Shown one piece after another: positions 3,900 to 13,407 of a stretch of 49,184 nucleotides of DNA (the first letter of the stretch is position 1; each line of letters starts with the position of its first letter). The stretch is from contig CALSCP010000324.1 of the NCBI GenBank assembly GCA_943704425.1, forward strand, positions 22,732-71,915, read 5' to 3'. The notes beneath the pieces are model-generated. The model was given only the letters and a program-made list of their open reading frames with translations. It did no database searches and had not been told where the DNA came from. The translations under genes and the position numbers were made by a program. The DNA comes from Ministeria vibrans ATCC 50519. Lineage: Eukaryota; Protista; Filasterea.

Positions 3900-4382
3900 T
3901 CAAGTGAACAATCCCGATAATGATATAATAAAAATGGTGTGTGAATTCGGTTCCAGAAGACAACTCAAAAGCAATCGGGCAACCGACTGGGGGGACTGGC
4001 GGCATACCAGTGCACCCACCCTGCCCCTCCACGACTGGCGCACTGACGGCACTGTCGCCCCGCTCTGCAAGCTGTGTCAAGCAAGCCGTGTTTTATTCTT
4101 CGCGAAATTTCCCGCAAAATCGCGAATATAAAAGAAAAAAGGGGAAAAAAAGGACTTAATCGTATAGGCAAGTGATAGCGAAGCAGTGAGTGTAGTTGGT
4201 AGAGGACGTAGTTTGTCTTGTGAACGCAATTCATGCAAAATCCGGGCGCTTGTGGCGTCGCAATCGGGTTTCCCTCTTCTTCCACGTCGGATTCGCTGGA
4301 AGTTGATCTGAATATAAGAGCAACTTTAACTTTTCAGCCGTCACTTTTTTTTCTCAAACTCCCCTCTCCAATTGTATTCACT

Positions 4383-7076
4383 ATGCGTACATTTGTTGCT
4401 GTTGCAGCTGTGCTTGCACTCTGCGTCGCCGGCGCGTTCGCCGACGACGAAAAGAAAGAGGACTACGGTTCGGTGATCGGTAAGTTAGCACACACACACG
4501 CAACACTCAAATCCAGACTCACAATGGCCTCGCTCGTCCCACCATGCTGTAGGAATTGATCTGGGCACCACCTACTCTTGGTAAGCATCACGCAAATCTT
4601 CTTGGGTTTGCGTTTTTGGCTTGCCGGCCAATGAGCGCTCAGCACGTGTAGACTCGCTCCCTCCGCCCCTGCACTCTCCCCTTGCACGCAATTCCCACCA
4701 TCCACCCTTCCTATCTTGTATCTACCTTCCTGTTCCACAACCGGCACGTTCTGACTCCCCTGATCGTCTGCACTTGTGATTATCGTTATTTTTTTTTTTT
4801 TTTGCTCTGCTCACGGGCTCCTATTTCCTTGCTTCCCATGCCCTTTGCTGCCCAGTTGTAGTTTTCCTTGATAAACATGTATTCCGCTTGTTGATGCGGT
4901 TGATCCTGACTCATAGTCTTGTTTTTTTTTCCTGTTTTTTTTTCTTTTCTTTTTTTGACTTTGCATGATTGCTAATTCTTTTTTTCTCTTCTTTTTTTCT
5001 TACCTGTCTGTGTAGCGTCGGAATCTTCAAGGGAGGACGCGTGGAGATCATTGCGAACGACCAGGGCAACCGCATCACGCCGTCGTACGTGGCGTTCACC
5101 GAGGAGGGCGACCGTCTGATCGGCGATGCCGCCAAGAACCAACTGACCTCCAACCCCGAGAACACCATCTTCGACGCCAAGCGTCTCATTGGCCGCGAAT
5201 TCAACGACAAGAACGTCCAGAACGACATGAAGGCGTGGCCTTTTAAGGTAGCCCATTGACTAGTCGCGTACGACTTGGCGCTTACTTTCTCCCCTTTGTG
5301 CAGGTTGTGTCCAAGGCAAACAAGCCGCATGTGCAGGTCAACGTTGGCGCGACCGCCAAGACCTTTACCCCCGAGGAAATCTCCGCTATGGTTCTGACCA
5401 AGATGAAGGTAAATATTTCTTGTCATTTTGCTCTACTGTTTTGTTTCGAGCCTAGCACACAACAACTCAAATCTGTCAAACCAATTAACAGGAAACCGCC
5501 GAGGAGTACCTTGGCAAGAAGGTGACGCACGCCGTCGTGACTGTGCCGGCGTACTTTAACGACGCTCAGCGCCAGGCTACCAAGGACGCGGGCACAATTG
5601 CGGGACTCACTGTGATGCGTATCATCAACGAGCCGACTGCGGCGGCCATTGCGTACGGACTGGACAAGAAGGAAGGCGAGAAGAACATTATCGTGTTCGA
5701 CCTGGGCGGTGGTACCTTCGACGTGTCGCTCCTCACCATTGACAACGGCGTCTTTGAGGTCGTTGCTACCGCCGGCGACACCCATCTGGGTGGTCAGGAC
5801 TTTGACCAGCGTGTCATGCAGCACTTCATCAAGCTTATCCAAAAGAAGATGGGCAAGGACCTGACCAAGGACAAGCGCGCGATGCAGAAGCTTCGACGTG
5901 AGTGCGAGAAGGCCAAGCGTGCGCTCTCGGCCGCTCACCAGACCCGTCTCGAGATCGAGTCGCTCATTGACGGCGAGGACTTCAGCGAGACTCTTACCCG
6001 CGCCAAGTTTGAGGAGCTCAACATGGACCTGTTCAAGGGAACGCTCAAGCCGGTCAAGAAGGTCCTCGAGGACGGTGACCTCCGCAAGGACGAGATTGAC
6101 GAGATTGTCCTCGTCGGTGGCAGCACCCGTATCCCTAAGGTCCAGCAGCTTGTCAAAGATCTCTTCAACGGAAAAGAGGTAAAAAGAAAAAAAAAACTTA
6201 TCCAATTTTTTCTTCTAATTTTGTGTTTGTTTTCAGCCTTCTCGTGGAATCAACCCCGACGAGGCGGTTGCGTACGGTGCGGCTGTTCAGGCCGGTGTGT
6301 TGAGCGGCGAGGAGGACACGGGTGATCTCGTGCTGCTCGACGTCAACCCGCTCACGCTCGGAATTGAGACTGTCGGCGGAGTCATGTCCAAGGTGATCCC
6401 CCGCAACACTGTTGTGCCCACCAAGAAGAGCCAGATCTTCTCGACTGCCTCGGACAACCAGCCCACCGTCACCATCCAGGTGTTTGAGGGCGAGCGACCC
6501 ATGACCAAGGACAACCACCAGCTCGGCAAGTTTGATCTCACTGGCGTCCCCCCCGCCCCGCGCGGCACCCCCCAGATTGATGTCACTTTTGAGATTGACG
6601 TCAACGGTATCCTGCGCGTGTCCGCCGAGGACAAGGGCACTGGCAACAAGGAAAAGATCACCATCAATCAGGATTCATCGTCGAAGCTCTCGCCCGAGGA
6701 CATTGAGCGCATGATTCTCGAGGCGGAGCGTTTCGCCGACGAGGACGCCAAGGTGAAGGAGCGTGTCGAGGCCAAGAACGAGTTTGAGGGCTATGCCTAC
6801 TCGATCAAGAACCAGATCAAGGACGAGGCCAAGCTGGGCGGTAAGCTGAGCGACGAGGAGAAGGAGACTCTCGGCAACGCCTGCGACGAGGCCATCGAGT
6901 GGCTCGACAGCAACGCCGACGCTGACGCTGAGGCGCTCAAGGAGAAGAAGGCCGAGCTTGAGAAGGTTGTCCAGCCCATTGTCAGCAAGCTCTATGAGGG
7001 CGCCGAGGGCGCTGCCCCGCCGCCTGCTGGCGAGGAGAGCGAGGAGGATGTCGACGAGGACCGTGACGAGTTGTAA
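4383..7076 (+). CDS. HSPA5: BiP/GRP78, ER-lumenal Hsp70 (6 exons)
   Basis: Signal peptide [20 protein letters not shown], then [60 protein letters not shown] and C-terminal RDEL. Exons 4383-4479, 4553-4580, 5016-5247, 5304-5408, 5492-6178, 6237-7076. Confidence 0.97.
4628..4646 (+). promoter_or_regulatory. ERSE-like element (CCAAT-N10-CACG) in BiP intron 2
   Basis: CCAAT gagcgctcag CACG is one mismatch from mammalian CCAAT-N9-CCACG. A CCACGTC core also occurs at 4282-4288 upstream of the ATG. Confidence 0.35.
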
Positions 7077-7194
7077 ATCAATAATGCATTTTTTTTTCGT
7101 AATTTCATACGTGATCTGTGAAAGGAAGCGATTTGCGATCTCAATAATAATAATAATGCAATCTTGTACTCCTCCAAAAGACAACTTTGGGCCG

Positions 7195-8141
7195 CTACTT
7201 TTCCATTTCCTCTTTGATAAGGGTCATTTTGGTTTTGAGTTCGCGGTACTCGGGAGAGTCAAGCTGACTGGGCGTGAGGTAGTTTTCATACAATTCAACG
7301 AGAGCCTAAGGGCAAATATGACGAGATTGTTTTATCATGAGTAGTAGTGTTATTGTTAGTATTGTGTTATTATTATTGTTGTTATTATTGATAATAATAA
7401 TAATACGTCTTATTATTATTATTATTATTTTTATTATTGTTATTAGTATTGATATTATTATTATAATTGTTTGTTATTGAGATTTTCTATCATTTATAAC
7501 ATTTTCTTATTGTAGTAGAATGGGTGGTACCTCAATGAGATTGGACACAAAGTCGATTTGGCGCACATTGAGACACTCGTCGTCTTCGCTCTCTTCATTT
7601 TCACCTTCAATACTCTACGGCATGACAGGGCGTTCAGACAAGTTTATCTGACCATGCACAACAGCACACAAATGGCTACCTCGAAGGCGCGGATGATCAA
7701 CTCCATGTGGCCCTTCCAGATGGATGTGCGTAACGTCGTGCGCAGTGCGTCGTTGAGAATATGTGTCGACGCCAGAGACCGTTCAATCTGTTCAACTACA
7801 AAAAAGAGGAAAAGAAAGAAGAAGAAAAAAAGAATCAAAATATTATTATGTTCATACAACTGACACAAAAGGAGACAAACCTGTCGTGATGATGAGACGC
7901 ATAAGATCTTCTTCGCCAAGATTGCGACCCAAGAAAAAGTCCACAATGCTAAATCCGGGATTGGCACGGATGCGCGGGAGAACCTTGAGACACTGTTGCG
8001 ACAACACCCCATTGACCTGTAGGACAAAAACGAAAAAAAATAAGTAGAAAAAAACCCTCCCCTCCTCATTAGGGAACGTATATAATATTAATATACATAT
8101 AATATACAATTATAATATTATATAATTTATATATATATAAT

Positions 8142-8175
<34 letters not shown>

Positions 8176-11100
8176 GGTGTGTGTGTGAATGATTGGACAT
8201 ACAAGGCCAGCAAGACTCTCCATCATGTCCTCATATATGCTCGTGAGGTCTTCGTCGTTCTGGACACACTGTCCATGGTAGTTCAGTGACATGTTGATCA
8301 TGGTGGGCTGCAAGCCAGAAAGGACGAAAAGAGACACAATTAGAAAGAAGAGGATGGTGAGGGCTCAAAGGTGAGAACCTTTGCGTCGACGTCGATGGCG
8401 TCGGAGAGAAGAAAGATTTGCGAGCGAAAGTCGGGAAGAATGTCTTTGATGAGCGCATTGAGCGAATTGATAGCCACCAGACACTGCAACGCGACACAAA
8501 ACAAAATCAAAATAAACTCAACTTCCAATCGCCTTGCAATTTGTTCATACCTGAGAGGGGATGGCAGTCTTGTCGCTGCGCTGGAGATGGCGGGAAAAGG
8601 CAGAGCGAAGGGCAAAGGAAACGGCCTGGAAAGCATTCATGGTGATGACATGGAAGCGATGGGCAACGTGTTCGGCGACAATCTGGTCGGGAATGCTGAG
8701 AAATCGCAGCCAGTTGAGACGGCGCTCGAGCGTCACGGTGAGATCAAAAATCGATGGGATCATTTCGCTGGTGGAAGTTGCACTGGGTGGGTCAAAGGGA
8801 TCTTCGAGGATCCGTGAGGCGAGAATCTCGACGCAATGAACCTCGCTAGCGTCAAGGAAGTCAACAAAGTCGCTGAGAAAGAGCGAGCAGAGACGGCTCG
8901 AGAGCTCGGGCAGATGCGGGGCAATGCCAAAGCGATCCATAAAGGAAACAATCTGCTGGTAGACGTCGAGGCAGGTGCCTTCAGTTGCAAATGATTCGAT
9001 GGAAATGGAGCGTTTCGGCGAGCGCACGTCGCTCGGGATGCGCTCCAGTTGGTCGAGTAGTAAATCAAAAAGAACGGCGGCGTTGGACTGGACAAGCGTA
9101 AAGAAGGAACGACCGCTACTCGCCAGCTGTTGTACTTTGGAGAAGGCAACCTCAAAGTAAGAGTGGTCGTCCTCAAGGTCGGCCAAAATAAGCTGCAGCA
9201 AGTAGACGAGACGGCGCAGTTCGGGACTCATCTGCCGCCAGTTACCCAGCTGACCCATATCACCGACCTCGACGCGCGAATTCGACTGCTCGCCCACATC
9301 AAACTGCTGGCTGTCGTCGCCCGACCTACCGCCAAACGCAGAGAGCACACTCCCAAACGAACCGGTCGAGTTGCCCCGGTCCAGCTGCTGTATCATCTCC
9401 TCAAAGCGCTCCACGTCGCTCTCGGTAGTCTGTAGCATCGTCGAGAAGCGCTCCACCGTGCCTTTGCGCAGGAGTTTCGGCATAAAAACGTAAATCTTCT
9501 GTGCGCGCGAGCTCGCGTCAATAAACGACCGGTTGTTGATAATCTCGTGTAGCATCTGCACAAAGCCCTGAAGGGCGCCTGAAAAAGAAAAAAGCAAAAA
9601 AAAAAGGAAAGAGAGAGAAGCGAGGGAACAACCACAAAGTCATGTAAGCATTTATTTTGTGCGACACGACGCACCAATGCACACTAAAAAAAGGACGACA
9701 CTCGTTGTATGAGGATGCGTACCTGCTGGCTTGTTGAAGGGAAAATTGCGCTTGTAAACGCTGATTTGCTGCTCGAGGTTGGACTGAAGATCGTCCATGA
9801 CAGTGATGAAGAGGTCGTTTTCCTGGACGCCAAAGATGGGGGAGCGCAGGGAGTCGGAACATGACGTGAAGACTGCATGCAGCAGATTGGGGTCGAGAAA
9901 GGTCTTGCGCCAGAGTTCGGTGAGGAGTTGAAGGTACGTGATTTTGCGGTGAACGTCGCTGACACCGTAGCGAGCAACGTAATCGTCGAGCACGGCCACA
10001 ATGGGAGGTGACAGTCGACCGAGCGTGTGACACTTCAACACCTCGTACTTGAGTACCTTGCGCAAAATGATGCGGTACCACAAGTTGTGGTTCACTTCAA
10101 TGCTCACGCCGCCGGTTGTCGAGTCCTGGTGCTGCAGTGAGCGGTGCAACTTGGTGAGCTCACGATCGCGTACATGTGCTTCGCTGCCACCAGACTTGCC
10201 GACGAGCATTGCTGCAAGCTTGTCGCGCCTCTGGTGGTGCACGCCGGCGGCCTTGTCGTCCTTCTTGCCAACCACCGTAGGCACGTATGTCTGTTTGGTC
10301 GCCGCCATGATGCTCTTGACCCACATTTCGCTCTGCTGCGAGTCGGTGTGCGCAAAAAACACAGTCGACGCGCCCGCCTTGGTCACTTTGAAGGTGTACA
10401 CGCCTGTCGTCGAGGGAATGCACTGAGCAATGACGTCGTCCTCAACCGAGTCAGTGTACGCCACAATGTGACGGTCAAAAAAGAGCTGGTGTGCCGGCTC
10501 GCTCTTGCGACGCTTGAACTGCGCCAAGTAGAACTCAAAGTCACCCTCGCCGTAGATGATGATGTAGCGCTTCTTCCAACGCTTCCAAGGCCCACCCTGA
10601 CACCACACCCAGCCAGCCTGGTAACACTTGCGGTCCACTGTCGCCTTGAGACGCACCATCAACTCCACCTTGCCCTGCATACATACATATATATATATAT
10701 AATTATATACATTACAAATAATAGACATCTTTTTTTTTCTTTTTTTTGTTTGTTGGTTTGTTTGTTTGTTTGTTTGTGTTTGTTTGTTTGTTTGTTTGTT
10801 TGTTCCTTTTTTTGTTTTACTTTACCTTAGGCAGAGCTTTGTTTTTCGTGGGAGAATCTGACTCGGACGATTTGCGAATGGATTCGCCTTGGGAGTCAAA
10901 GTAGGAGTCGAGCGGGACCCACTTGCCCAGGCTCCATGGGTTGGTGTTGCGCAGACTGCCATAGTCGACGTCAATAGTGACGCGTCCGAGCGTCTTGTCG
11001 TCGAGCAAGCCCGTGCGCACCTGACGCAGGGAAATGGCGACTTGGCCCACGGGAATGGACATTGGACAGGCGGAGGTCTCGTCCCATTCGGGTGCACTTG

Positions 11101-13407
11101 CGGGCGACGGTGACGTGCGGTAGCGCAGCGTGGAGTTGCTCTCCTCCTCGGTCTGGCAGTACACTTCCGTCTTGCCGGGTGGCAGTCCACGAGCACGCAG
11201 CACCTGTACCTGTAGTTCGAATGAGAAGGACAGGTGCACGTGGGCCTGTGCGGTCGCCTCCGTTCTGCTTCCTTTGAGGTAGGTGCTCTTCTGAAGACAG
11301 GGCAACTCGCTGTCGAGGCACTTGCGGTGGGTTGTCTTGGAGCATTGACTGCACTTATAACCCTGGTAGCCAACACCCCACAAAAGTCCCTTGCAGCGCG
11401 AGCAAAACGTCGGTGTGTTGAAGTGTGTGAGCACAAAGTGGTGGCCGTTGACGTCGCGCGCCTGCTCCTCGCCCTTGACCGCCGCCAGTGTCTGCGAAAG
11501 TCCCTCCAGCACTCCCCCGTCTTCCCCATCCGGCTCATTCCCACGGCCCTTCTACAACACAAGGTTAAACAACGAGAAGAATATAAGGATATAATGGTAT
11601 ACCTTGAGAGAGCGCTTCTGTCCCGATCGATTGAGTCCCATCGAGTCCAAGAGATGCATCACAGCACGCTCTTCCGACACCTTCCACTCCTCGTAGCCGT
11701 TAGGCAGCTACACAAAACAGCATTATAAGTGTAATGCGATCGATGCAACAAGTGATGCACTGAGGGAGTGAGTACCATAAAGTAGGACTTGTTGTAAATG
11801 GGATGTGACTCGATCATCGACAGACGCACGTCGATCTCTGTGCGAAACACCTCCAGCTGCTCATTTTCGTCGTTGAGCTTCACCTGAGTGTCCAACTTAA
11901 TCTGCTCCAGCTCAGATACCCCAAAGATACGACGCAGCTCATTGAACATTCCCTGTTTTCCCATTGTTAAACTAAGAAAAACAGTTCATCGCGTTAGTGC
12001 CGAAGCGCAACATCATTAATGCCGATCAAACTCACTTCTTTTTCTTCTTCTTTTTCTTCGCTTCTTCGCCCGATTTCAAGTAAAACACCGCCAAAAACTC
12101 CTATTGTGACACAAAAAAAAAACAACAACAACATTGAAGAGTCAGATAGTGTGCAGGTCCAGTCCATCGACGTACCTTCTCGCAGACGGAACGGAGTTCT
12201 TCGGCCTTGTCTGCATCGAGTCGGTGCAGAAGATTGCGGCGAAGGACATTGTTAAAAATGTCAATGAAATCCTACAGAGAGGAACGGCAGCACACCGGTG
12301 AGAATAGACTTACGACAAATCGTTTTGAGTATACTTACTGTCAACGAGTGCCCCTTGCTATTGAGCAAGTCGCGGCCGGCCCCCGAAAGAAAGCTCACAA
12401 ACCACTTGATGGTCATAGTCATGACGGCGTCTTTGACATTGGGAGTCGCGTTCGTGTCGCCACTTCCCTGTGATGAAATAAAAACACAACCGTGCGTTAA
12501 CATTGAAGTATTGCTGCGGCGGTTTGTACAGTAGCTGTGTTCGAGGCGAGGTACTGCTCGAAACGGGACTTCATGGCTTGGAAGTCTTTTGATGACATGG
12601 TGCCTAAACGGGTCCAATGCAGAAAGAGAAAGAAACAAAGTGATAGAGAGAGAAAACAAAAAAAAAACAAAGATAGATACAAAATGTGAGAAACAAGCGA
12701 GAGCGAGAGCGAGTGAGAGAAAGGAGGGAGAAAGAAACAAAGTGATAGAGAGAGAGAGAGAGGCAAAGTGATAAAAACAAAGCGATATAAACAAAGTGAG
12801 AGAAACAAGCGAGAGAGAGAGTGTGTGTGTGTCAGCAGGTCAGCACACGACCGAGAAGAGGGCCCGTCACCTTTTCCAAAGGTCGACTCAATGCGAAAGA
12901 TGTCGTTGAAGAAGCCTTTTCTACGCCGTGACATTGCTCTTGAGTCATCGTCGTTGCTCTGCGAGAGAGGCAGGCCGACCACGCGCATGAGAGCCGTGTA
13001 AATGGGCATAATGTTAGTCTGGCAGAAAAAAAAAACACAAAATCAACACAAACTGTGTACACACCGAAACGACTCTCACCACGCCCTCCTCGTCCGCCCC
13101 TGCATCATCCCCATTGTCGCTGTCGTCGTCCTACACCCGGAGGGAGGAGAACAATCGCAAATCAGCTCATTCGTCAAACTTGGGATATAATTCGCTGTAC
13201 TTTGCTGATGTACGATTCGCGCTGTTTGCGTTGATCCGCCTCGCCAGCGTCCGCGTCAGCCTCCTCCGCTTCTACTTCCGGATCGCTGTCTTGGCCTTGA
13301 GCGCGACGTTGGGCACGGACGAGTTCATCGTCAAGATCGCTTCCCTCACTCTCGTCGTCCGATACTTGATCTTCATCAAGCAAAATTTCCTCGTCAGACA
13401 GGTCCAT
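7195..13407 (-). CDS. CADPS: CAPS/UNC-31 (calcium-dependent secretion activator) homolog with added C1 domain; multi-exon
   Basis: Collinear CAPS motifs: IYTALMRVVGLPL; FQAMKSRFEQYL; KQGMFNELRRIFGVSELEQ..LNDENEQLEVFRTEIDVRL (cf. [39 protein letters not shown]); C2 'HLSFSFELQVQVLRARGL..VYCQTE..LDDKTLGRVTI'; PH 'AGWVWCQGGPWKRWKKRY..KSEP..WVKSIMAATKQTYVP'; helical MUN-like C-terminal half. The last exon ends ..LIKEEMEK* at 7195. Confidence 0.85.

What the first reader, a model, noticed from the sequence alone, without database searches (positions are those of the whole stretch)
11297..11443. CAPS/UNC-31 homolog with a Munc13-type DAG-binding C1 domain: a structural link between CAPS and Munc13
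Seen: a complete C1 domain, HHFVLTHFNTPTFCSRCKGLLWGVGYQGYKCSQCSKTTHRKCLDSELPCLQK, sits between the CAPS N-terminal helical region and the CAPS-type C2-PH tandem. It is in the same exon as the C2. Established: animal CAPS has C2-PH-MUN and no C1, whereas Munc13 has C1-C2B-MUN and no PH. The Munc13 C1 reads ..PTYCYECEGLLWGIARQG..CLQR, and the Pro/Trp/Gly/Gln residues of DAG-responsive C1 domains are retained here. Inference: this may preserve an ancestral C1-C2-PH-MUN priming factor responsive to both DAG and PIP2, with animal CAPS having lost C1.
Basis: partly seen in the sequence, partly recalled or inferred. Interest (0 to 1): 0.8.

Follow-up and report, generated by a model that had tools for sequence, protein, structure and literature searches.

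The report
CAPS priming factor with C1 domain
A single-celled relative of animals (Ministeria vibrans) has one gene for the vesicle-priming protein CAPS that carries an extra lipid-sensing C1 domain; two distant protist relatives share this layout, so it is probably the original form that animals later simplified, but nothing ties this C1 specifically to the one in Munc13.

Summary
Observation confirmed. On the minus strand, 11443-11297 encodes a complete C1 zinc finger (Pfam C1_1, E 5.6e-13) in the same 726-base exon as a C2. The next exon holds a PH domain that matches only CAPS among solved structures.

The gene has 11 GT-AG exons (11964-7195) and 1,218 codons. A profile of full-length CAPS proteins matches its exons in protein order, and it is single-copy. 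The genome is Ministeria vibrans (Filasterea): 2,860 scaffolds, as published.

New here: the two best relatives among 1.84 billion representatives are CAPS proteins of the ichthyosporeans Sphaerothecum destruens and Chromosphaera perkinsii. Both carry C1-C2-PH-MUN. No animal CAPS hit has a C1. A PH-region tree follows the species tree and separates C1-bearing from C1-less proteins (96/91). The simplest reading is that early holozoan CAPS had the C1 and the animal line lost it.

The "Munc13-type" label is not supported. The C1 is closest to novel-PKC C1A (60.8 bits; Munc13-1 46.4). A C1 tree is unresolved. Ministeria's own Munc13-type gene (C2B-MUN) has no C1.

DAG binding is inferred from residues only. 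The searchable literature does not report pre-animal CAPS or a C1 in CAPS; one paper lists CADPS as an animal novelty. Another first-stage note (s1-774705) flagged this CAPS gene on the same window. Verdict: new variant of a known family.

The parts
11776..11964 (-). Exon 1: ATG and the N-terminal CAPS motif (MFNELRRIFGVSELEQIKLD...NDENEQ)
   Evidence: The CAPS full-length profile matches it at E 4e-7, profile positions 272-340. An in-frame stop lies 8 codons upstream of the ATG, and the exon ends at a GT donor.
11603..11707 (-). Exon 2: 35-codon linker exon
   Evidence: AG/GT borders and phase 0. No domain found.
10826..11551 (-). Exon 3: C1 and C2 in one 242-codon exon
   Evidence: Pfam C1_1 5.6e-13, C2 2.6e-5, C2_CAPS 3.9e-4. 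CAPS profile E 6.3e-11. Ichthyosporean CAPS profile E 5.6e-18.
11297..11443 (-). C1 zinc finger (the finding): H-x12-C-x2-C-x13-C-x2-C-x4-H-x2-C-x6-C
   Evidence: All consensus DAG-type residues are present by direct reading.
9723..10674 (-). Exon 4: CAPS-type PH domain (WKRWKKRY basic motif) and the post-PH region
   Evidence: Pfam PH 3.3e-6. The only PDB hits are the CAPS PH (1wi1) and C2PH (7vs3), both E 1.6e-12. CAPS profile E 1.5e-60.
8551..9578 (-). Exon 5: start of the MUN / Munc13-homology region, strongly diverged
   Evidence: Pfam MUN E 0.01, 15.3 bits, below the 24.2-bit cut-off. CAPS profile E 3.1e-10, positions 823-1087. Ichthyosporean profile E 0.0026 over their MUN columns. No PDB hit.
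7195..8483 (-). Exons 6-11 (8483-8379, 8307-8203, 8016-7881, 7795-7680, 7614-7531, 7305-7195 with stop): C-terminal part
   Evidence: All borders are AG/GT, phases are consistent, there are no internal stops, and the total is 3,657 bases = 1,218 codons plus a stop. None has significant homology on its own. The exon 5/6 junction reads AIPSQ|CLVAINSLNAL, like the ichthyosporean consensus IPxxCxIFNNxxxL (direct reading).

Best explanation
The window is a scaffold of the filasterean Ministeria vibrans. It carries that organism's single CAPS/UNC-31 orthologue: 11 exons and about 1,218 residues. The domain order is N-terminal CAPS motif, C1, C2, PH, MUN.

Shown: the C1 is an intact zinc finger with every consensus residue of DAG/phorbol-ester-responsive C1 domains. 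It is encoded in the same exon as the C2.

Inferred (evolution): Ichthyosporea branch off before Filasterea, and the gene tree follows that order. The CAPS of the first holozoans therefore most likely already had the C1, and it was lost once on the line leading to animals and to an unplaced environmental lineage.

Inferred (mechanism): the protein is drawn to membrane patches that hold both PI(4,5)P2 and diacylglycerol. The PH domain, with its conserved WKRWKKR basic motif, together with the C2 would bind PI(4,5)P2. The C1 would bind diacylglycerol made from PI(4,5)P2 by phospholipase C. There the MUN region would promote SNARE assembly for regulated exocytosis. Animals split these two lipid inputs between CAPS and Munc13; here one protein would combine them.

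The C1 is a generic typical C1. Nothing shows that it shares descent with the Munc13 C1.
For: C1 real.

Same exon as the C2, and a coherent 11-exon model.

CAPS membership:
- The PH hits only CAPS structures, 1wi1 and 7vs3, E 1.6e-12, with WKRWKKR aligned.
- A profile of 10 full-length CAPS proteins matches exons 1, 3, 4 and 5 in order, at 4e-7, 6e-11, 1.5e-60 and 3e-10.
- Of 65 hits to the PH exon among 1.84 billion representatives, all but four unrelated proteins are CAPS by name or by BLAST to CAPS references.
- The gene is single-copy in the genome.

Recurrence: Sphaerothecum P0001 and Chromosphaera P0005 show C1_1, C2_CAPS, PH and MUN in the same order and spacing, with the same C-x6-C ending. 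The Sphaerothecum sequence comes from a transcript assembly.

No C1 in the other 63 hits by motif scan, nor in the 15 of them that I also scanned with Pfam.

Organism: G000 has 2,860 contigs and 29,722,531 bases. The published M. vibrans assembly has 2,860 scaffolds and 29,797,085 bp (PMC9492541, supplement 3).

Gene tree on 304 columns: (Sphaerothecum, Chromosphaera), Ministeria, (P0019, animals). The split between C1-bearing and C1-less proteins has support 96/91.

DAG supply is plausible: PI-PLC X-domain matches on at least nine contigs of the genome.

Animal division of labour between CAPS (PIP2) and Munc13 (PIP2, DAG): PMC3923642 and PMC3849599.
Against: - No expression data for this gene. 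No Ministeria CAPS protein was in either protein library, so the splice model rests on sequence logic and homology.
- The MUN region is only weakly detectable: Pfam is below its cut-off, and exons 6-11 have no homology support of their own.
- C2_CAPS is below the Pfam cut-off (21.2 bits against 27).
- The ichthyosporean C1s have Glu instead of Pro at position 11, and one has His instead of Gln at position 27. DAG binding is therefore not obviously conserved across the C1-bearing clade.
- A clade of the three CAPS C1s is not recovered in the C1 tree, though it is not rejected either (AU p 0.36).
- The inference of the ancestral state assumes orthology and the accepted holozoan species tree. It rests on only three C1-bearing species.
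- Absence of CAPS in choanoflagellates, Capsaspora and other lineages is weak evidence, because Ministeria's own CAPS was also missing from the libraries.
Confidence: 0.7

Rival explanations
1. The C1 is the same C1 as in Munc13, inherited from a single ancestral C1-C2-(PH)-MUN priming factor that existed before CAPS and Munc13 diverged. CAPS later lost the C1 and Munc13 lost or never had the PH.
For: In both families a typical C1 lies directly N-terminal to the C2 that precedes the MUN region (Munc13-1 chain 5ue8). CAPS and the Munc13-type gene are each other's nearest paralogues in this genome. Munc13-1's C1 is a clear hit at 46.4 bits.
Against: - The C1 scores higher against PKC delta C1A (60.8 bits), PKC theta C1A (51.8), PKC delta C1B (49.2) and PKC gamma C1A (48.5) than against Munc13-1.
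- Atlas look-alikes rank PKC C1-C2 (0.93) above Munc13-like clusters (0.87).
- The C1 tree is unresolved.
- Ministeria's Munc13-type gene has a C2 closest to Munc13-1 C2B (E 4.6e-14), yet it has no C1 within 8 kb upstream or anywhere on its contig. This reading would therefore need a further loss.
- The window's C2 resembles CAPS or generic C2, not Munc13 C2B.
Confidence: 0.15
2. The C1 is not ancestral to holozoan CAPS. Either it was gained separately at the same place in Ministeria and in ichthyosporeans, or two old CAPS paralogues (one with C1, one without) were retained differently by protists and animals.
For: - The three CAPS C1s are only about 43% identical (window against Chromosphaera, counted by hand), no more than the window's C1 is to this genome's PKC-like C1 (45%).
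- The free C1 tree does not unite them.
- The unrooted CAPS tree puts all C1 bearers on one side of a branch, which a root on that branch would turn into a single gain or an old duplication.
- C1 domains are frequent in this genome, with at least 38 matches, so domain shuffling is plausible.
Against: - Same insertion point, between the N-terminal CAPS motif and the C2, with similar spacing.
- All three share the C-x6-C ending, the HF(N/S)T segment before the first Cys, and C..C(S/T)K..H(R/K)KC.
- Monophyly is not rejected (AU p 0.36).
- The gene tree matches the species tree, as expected for orthologues.
- Only one CAPS gene is present in Ministeria.
Confidence: 0.15
3. The architecture is real, but the C1 does not sense diacylglycerol. 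It would act as a structural or protein-binding zinc finger, as in atypical C1 domains. This concerns the mechanism only and is compatible with any of the evolutionary readings.
For: The Sphaerothecum and Chromosphaera C1s replace Pro11 with Glu and Phe13 with Ser. Sphaerothecum also replaces Gln27 with His. These are positions that, from established C1 biochemistry (my own knowledge), matter for phorbol-ester binding. All three C1s have a shortened last spacer, x6 instead of x7. The Pfam match stops at model position 44 of 53.
Against: The Ministeria C1 keeps Pro11, Thr12, Phe13, Leu20, Leu21, Trp22, Gly23, Gln27 and Gly28 (direct reading). Its best matches are ligand-binding PKC C1 domains, and chimaerins and atypical PKC score lower. 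The genome has the enzymes to make DAG.
Confidence: 0.3
4. Gene-model or assembly artefact: a C1-C2 gene and a PH-MUN gene lie side by side and are wrongly read as one.
For: There is no transcript evidence for this locus. The only database copy of exon 3 is a prokaryote-style ORF call on a 1,068-base metagenome scaffold.
Against: - C1 and C2 share one exon.
- The C2-to-PH junction is a 151-base GT-AG intron in phase 0.
- The C2-PH tandem is the CAPS hallmark, and both halves match 7vs3.
- The CAPS profile is collinear across four exons.
- Two other species have the same order in single proteins, one of them from a transcript.
Confidence: 0.03

Closest known systems
Animal CAPS1/CAPS2 (CADPS, C. 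elegans UNC-31)
   Same: N-terminal CAPS motif, C2 followed directly by a PH with the WKRWKKR basic motif, a post-PH region and a MUN region, all in the same order. Similar overall length (about 1,200-1,400 residues).
   Different: Has a C1 where animal CAPS has a helical linker. About 25-28% identity over the PH exon. The N-terminal region is much shorter. C2_CAPS and MUN fall below Pfam cut-offs. The C-terminal vesicle-binding region was not recognisable.
Sphaerothecum destruens (EP00126_P011492) and Chromosphaera perkinsii (EP01135_P004208) CAPS-like proteins
   Same: Identical domain order C1-C2-PH-MUN. Same C-x6-C ending of the C1. Best hits to the window's PH exon and C1-C2 exon.
   Different: Only about 28-33% identical to the window. 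Their C1s have Glu at position 11 and Ser at position 13, so they look less like ligand-binding C1s than the Ministeria one. As far as I could find, these are unannotated database entries not discussed in the literature.
Munc13-1/2/3 (UNC-13)
   Same: A typical C1 immediately N-terminal to a C2 that precedes a MUN region. Presumed DAG- plus PIP2-guided membrane recruitment of a SNARE-assembly factor (PMC3849599, PMC8648301).
   Different: Munc13 has no PH and has a C-terminal C2C; the window's gene has a PH and no second C2. The window's C2 is not of the C2B type. The C1 is not closer to Munc13 than to PKC. Ministeria has a separate Munc13-type gene without a C1.
C1 domains of novel and classical protein kinase C
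   Same: Highest sequence similarity: PKC delta C1A 60.8 bits, PKC theta C1A 51.8 bits. All consensus ligand-binding residues are present. C1 followed by C2, as in classical PKC.
   Different: No kinase domain. The last Cys spacer is x6. The protein context is entirely CAPS.

Membership tests
CAPS / CADPS / UNC-31 | PH domain of the CAPS type with the basic WKRWKKR(F/Y) stretch, directly after the C2 | tested here: met
   Pfam PH 3.3e-6. The only PDB hits are the CAPS PH (1wi1) and CAPS C2PH (7vs3), E 1.6e-12, with wkrwkkr aligned.
CAPS / CADPS / UNC-31 | CAPS-type C2 (Pfam C2_CAPS) | tested here: inconclusive
   Generic C2 scores 24.8 bits, above its 22-bit cut-off. C2_CAPS scores 21.2 bits, below its 27-bit cut-off. 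7vs3 C2 E 0.0016. The ichthyosporean homologues are similarly weak, at 25.2 and 23.5 bits.
CAPS / CADPS / UNC-31 | MUN / Munc13-homology region C-terminal to the PH | tested here: inconclusive
   Pfam MUN scores 15.3 bits against a 24.2-bit cut-off. No single-sequence hits. The CAPS profile matches exon 5 at E 3.1e-10, and the ichthyosporean profile at 0.0026 over their MUN columns.
CAPS / CADPS / UNC-31 | Conserved N-terminal CAPS motif (LYxxFQxVLG...DEQ) | tested here: met
   Exon 1 matches CAPS profile positions 272-340 at E 4e-7. Alignment.
CAPS / CADPS / UNC-31 | Collinear match to full-length family members, with relatives that are CAPS proteins | tested here: met
   Profile matches are in order: 272-340, 375-510, 525-828, 823-1087. 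Of the 65 hits to the PH exon, all but four unrelated proteins are CAPS by name or by BLAST to CAPS references.
CAPS / CADPS / UNC-31 | Function in Ca2+-dependent priming of dense-core vesicles | not testable with these tools
   Needs cell biology or rescue assays.
Munc13 (UNC-13) proper | C1-C2B-MUN-C2C order, with a C-terminal C2 and no PH | tested here: not met
   A PH is present. No second C2 in exons 5-11. A separate Munc13-type gene exists on contig C281.
Munc13 (UNC-13) proper | C1 specifically related to the Munc13 C1 | tested here: inconclusive
   Munc13-1 C1 scores 46.4 bits, below four PKC C1 domains. The tree of 19 C1s has no supported branches and contains no Munc13 sequences, because none could be fetched by reference.
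Typical (DAG/phorbol-ester-responsive) C1 domain | H-x12-C-x2-C-x13/14-C-x2-C-x4-H-x2-C-x7-C zinc scaffold | tested here: met
   All eight ligands are present, with spacings 12, 2, 13, 2, 4, 2, 6. The last spacer is 6, not 7, which is within the PROSITE range as I recall it.
Typical (DAG/phorbol-ester-responsive) C1 domain | Consensus ligand- and membrane-contact residues (Pro11, Thr12, Leu20/21, Trp22, Gly23, Gln27) | tested here: met
   Direct reading of ...NTPTFCSRCKGLLWGVGYQG.... The role of these residues comes from established C1 biochemistry, not from a test here.
Typical (DAG/phorbol-ester-responsive) C1 domain | Actual binding of DAG or phorbol ester | not testable with these tools
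   The structure prediction of the C1-C2 exon failed (mean pLDDT 35). Binding needs a bench assay.

The most novel reading that the evidence does not exclude
In the unicellular ancestors of animals, the diacylglycerol sensor of the exocytic priming machinery sat on CAPS, as a C1-C2-PH-MUN protein that detects DAG and PIP2 together, while the Munc13-type paralogue had none. On the animal stem the C1 was dropped from CAPS and a C1 appeared on Munc13. That would be a hand-over of DAG control between paralogues, coinciding with the origin of synaptic-type secretion. CAPS itself, listed as an animal novelty, would date back to the root of Holozoa.
Probability: 0.3. Interest if true: 0.75.

Novelty: new variant of a known kind. 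Interest (0 to 1): 0.6.

Why it matters
CAPS and Munc13 are the two priming factors of regulated exocytosis in neurons and endocrine cells. How their lipid inputs (PIP2 for CAPS; DAG and PIP2 for Munc13) came to be divided is not known.

This gene shows three things:
- CAPS predates animals, although a genome-wide study counted CADPS among 25 animal-specific core gene groups (PMC5928047).
- The pre-animal form carried a C1 domain.
- In at least one close relative of animals, the C1 is on CAPS and not on the Munc13-type gene.

This gives a concrete, testable picture of how DAG regulation of secretion was wired before nervous systems. It also provides a natural 'CAPS plus C1' protein for structure-function work on membrane recruitment of MUN-domain proteins.

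Tried and rejected
- AlphaFold2 on the C1-C2 exon with a three-sequence alignment gave mean pLDDT 35. I did not use it and ran no fold search.
- The tree of 19 C1 domains (this genome plus three CAPS) had no supported branch. It is useful only in that it does not reject one CAPS-C1 clade.
- Word-indexed protein searches, all three used. The C1-C2 exon found only the window's own ORF. The MUN part of the C801 PH...MUN ORF found nothing. A Sel1-repeat ORF meant to place the organism was swamped by repeat proteins.
- I could not fetch Munc13 or animal PKC sequences by reference, so no C1 tree with them was built.
- The metagenome scan with a CAPS alignment failed at first for lack of a conserved stretch. 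It then ran and found no relatives.
- The genome-wide C2_CAPS scan found nothing, not even the window's weak match.
- One search failed on my wrong exon coordinates. They were corrected.
- A Munc13-looking C1 on contig C2759 turned out to belong to a C2-C1-RasGAP gene.
- The choanoflagellate hit P0042 is a multi-PH protein, not CAPS.
Every search used single exons by reference.
Full report
**Observation.** Pfam C1_1 matches at E 5.6e-13. The eight zinc ligands are spaced H-x12-C-x2-C-x13-C-x2-C-x4-H-x2-C-x6-C. The residues that mark DAG/phorbol-ester-type C1 domains are all present by direct reading: Pro11, Thr12, Leu20/21, Trp22, Gly23, Gln27. The C1 shares a 242-codon exon (11551-10826) with a C2 (Pfam C2 2.6e-5; C2_CAPS 3.9e-4, below its cut-off). 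The next exon carries a PH domain (3.3e-6).

**Gene model.** I read eleven exons on the minus strand: 11964-11776, 11707-11603, 11551-10826, 10674-9723, 9578-8551, 8483-8379, 8307-8203, 8016-7881, 7795-7680, 7614-7531 and 7305-7195.
- All introns are GT-AG and 51-225 bases long.
- Phases agree and there are no internal stops.
- The total is 3,657 bases: 1,218 codons plus a stop.
- An in-frame stop lies 8 codons upstream of the ATG.

I left out every step that would use the joined protein. There is no transcript evidence. Exons 6-11 rest on splice logic alone, apart from a motif that spans the exon 5/6 junction.

**Family.**
- The PH exon finds only two kinds of solved structure, the CAPS PH (1wi1) and the CAPS C2PH tandem (7vs3), both at E 1.6e-12. 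The basic WKRWKKR stretch is aligned.
- Against 1.84 billion representatives, the PH exon has only 65 hits, none above about 33% identity.
- Apart from four unrelated proteins (three multi-PH proteins and one beta-propeller repeat protein), they are CAPS by name or by BLAST to CAPS references.
- A profile I built from ten full-length CAPS proteins matches the window's open segments in protein order: exon 1 at 4e-7, exon 3 at 6.3e-11, exon 4 at 1.5e-60 and exon 5 at 3.1e-10.
- The MUN region is strongly diverged. Pfam MUN scores 15.3 bits against a 24.2-bit cut-off, and single-sequence searches find nothing.
- The gene is single-copy. Its nearest paralogue in the genome is a Munc13-type gene on contig C281.

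I file it as a CAPS orthologue, with the C2_CAPS and MUN criteria only weakly met.

**Organism.** Earlier notes of this scan name Ministeria vibrans. I checked this independently. G000 has 2,860 contigs and 29,722,531 bases. The published M. vibrans ATCC 50519 assembly has 2,860 scaffolds and 29,797,085 bp (PMC9492541, supplement 3). My attempt to place the organism by protein similarity failed.

**The C1 in other CAPS proteins.** A motif scan of all 65 hits found a C1 in only two, and they are the best and fifth-best hits: P0001 and P0005.
- P0001 is from Sphaerothecum destruens and comes from a transcript assembly. P0005 is from Chromosphaera perkinsii. Both are ichthyosporeans.
- Pfam gives both C1_1, C2_CAPS, PH and MUN in that order.
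- In an alignment, the C1 occupies the same place in all three protists, between the N-terminal CAPS motif and the C2. Animal CAPS and the environmental P0019 have a helical linker there.
- The three C1s share the x6 last spacer, which no other typical C1 in this genome has. They also share several residues around the ligands.
- No animal CAPS hit has a C1, including the sponge Oscarella.

**Gene tree.** On 304 columns of the PH-exon region the tree is (Sphaerothecum, Chromosphaera), Ministeria, (P0019, animals). The branch that separates C1-bearing from C1-less proteins has support 96/91. This is the accepted branching order of Holozoa, with Ichthyosporea branching before Filasterea and Filasterea before animals (my own knowledge of the field, as in PMC9492541). 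It is what orthologues would show. On that rooting the C1 bearers form a grade. One loss on the line to animals explains the data, against two gains.
- Only three C1-bearing species are known.
- The C1 tree itself is unresolved. One CAPS-C1 clade costs 2.4 log-likelihood units and is not rejected (AU p 0.36).
- Absence of CAPS from choanoflagellates, Capsaspora and others in the libraries is weak evidence, because Ministeria's own CAPS was absent too. A metagenome scan added nothing.

**The Munc13 link.**
- The C1 alone scores 60.8 bits against PKC delta C1A, 51.8 against PKC theta C1A, 49.2 against PKC delta C1B and 48.5 against PKC gamma C1A.
- It then scores 46.4 against Munc13-1, 42.2 against RasGRP1, about 41 against Vav and about 28 against chimaerins.
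- Atlas look-alikes of the C1-C2 exon are PKC C1-C2 clusters (0.93-0.91) ahead of a Munc13-like cluster (0.87).

So this is a generic typical C1, not a Munc13-type one.

The genome has four other MUN loci:
- A 1,812-residue PH...MUN ORF on C801.
- A MUN-only gene on C1493.
- A weak MUN with a weak C-terminal C1 on C1704.
- A C2-MUN gene on C281.

The C2 of the C281 gene is specifically closest to the Munc13-1 C2B (6nyc, E 4.6e-14, against 5.5e-6 for synaptotagmin). Its MUN exon hits Munc13-4 and Munc13-1. That Munc13-type gene has no C1 on its contig in the genome-wide scan. It also has none within 8 kb upstream of the C2 using a local C1 profile: best E 0.085, against 5.8e-19 for the positive control. 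A 10-N gap lies just upstream.

In this filasterean the C1 is therefore on CAPS and not on the Munc13-type gene, the reverse of animals. Common descent of the two C1s would need an extra loss and has no positive support. I could not fetch Munc13 sequences by reference, so the direct tree remains to be done.

**Mechanism (inferred).** In animals, CAPS needs PIP2 through its PH domain. Munc13 is recruited through its C2B (Ca2+/PIP2) and its C1 (DAG) (PMC3923642, PMC3849599). The Ministeria protein keeps the PH basic motif and adds a consensus C1. The genome has PI-PLC X-domain matches on at least nine contigs, so DAG can be made from PIP2. I propose a single priming factor recruited where PIP2 and DAG coincide, with the MUN region acting on SNAREs. 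The ichthyosporean C1s have Glu11 and Ser13, and one has His27, so ligand binding may not be conserved across the clade.

**Novelty.** Eight full-text searches found no report of CAPS outside animals or of a C1 in CAPS. Two reviews of pre-animal secretory and synaptic proteins do not mention CAPS. Paps and Holland list CADPS among 25 animal-novel core groups (PMC5928047). The library lacks most subscription journals, so this is not proof of novelty. I class the finding as a new variant of a known family. The same window's CAPS gene was also flagged by another first-stage note (s1-774705).

Noticed in passing
G000:C281, about 4000-11050, minus strand (L007, L050): Ministeria's Munc13-type gene. 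Its C2 is closest to the Munc13-1 C2B (E 4.6e-14), and its MUN exon hits Munc13-4 and Munc13-1. No C1 on the contig or within 8 kb upstream. A 10-N gap lies just upstream of the C2 exon.
   Followed up: partly
G000:C801 (L046:593-6028, minus): A single-exon 1,812-residue ORF with an N-terminal PH (2.5e-19) and a C-terminal MUN (3.8e-9). A word-indexed search of its MUN part found no relative at all.
   Followed up: partly
G000:C1704 (L008:3888-9191, minus): A 1,768-residue ORF with a weak MUN match (22.9 bits) and a weak, atypical C1 near its C-terminus. The layout is unlike both Munc13 and CAPS.
   Followed up: no
L039 (JGI 3300047097 contig) and L048 (ENA ERZ19433661, 4.36-Mb contig): P0019/P0072 is a CAPS-like protein without a C1 that groups next to animals in the PH-region tree. 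It is uninterrupted on the JGI contig, next to a Chromo/Pre-SET/SET gene, but called in several pieces on the ENA contig. The organism is unknown.
   Followed up: partly
L043 (ENA ERZ23497388, scaffold SCHR19-1_SAMN09406007_METAG-scaffold_15336): A 1,068-base metagenome scaffold carries the window's C1-C2 exon ORF at 100% identity. Ministeria or a very close relative is therefore present in that sample.
   Followed up: no
G000:C2759 (L040), C209 (L041), C388 (L042): Other hosts of typical C1 domains in this genome: a C2-C1-RasGAP gene whose C1 looks Munc13-like by eye, a Vav-like CH...C1-SH3 gene, and a myotubularin-C1-PH ORF of 1,605 residues.
   Followed up: partly
window 4969-7076 (+): An intron-containing HSP70 gene of the BiP type, ending in ...DEL, lies tail-to-tail with the CAPS gene. 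The two stop codons are about 120 bases apart.
   Followed up: no
window 10675-10825 (-) and 7306-7530 (-): Two introns of the CAPS gene are filled with simple repeats: (CAAA)n-like in one, and AAT/ATA-rich runs in the other.
   Followed up: no
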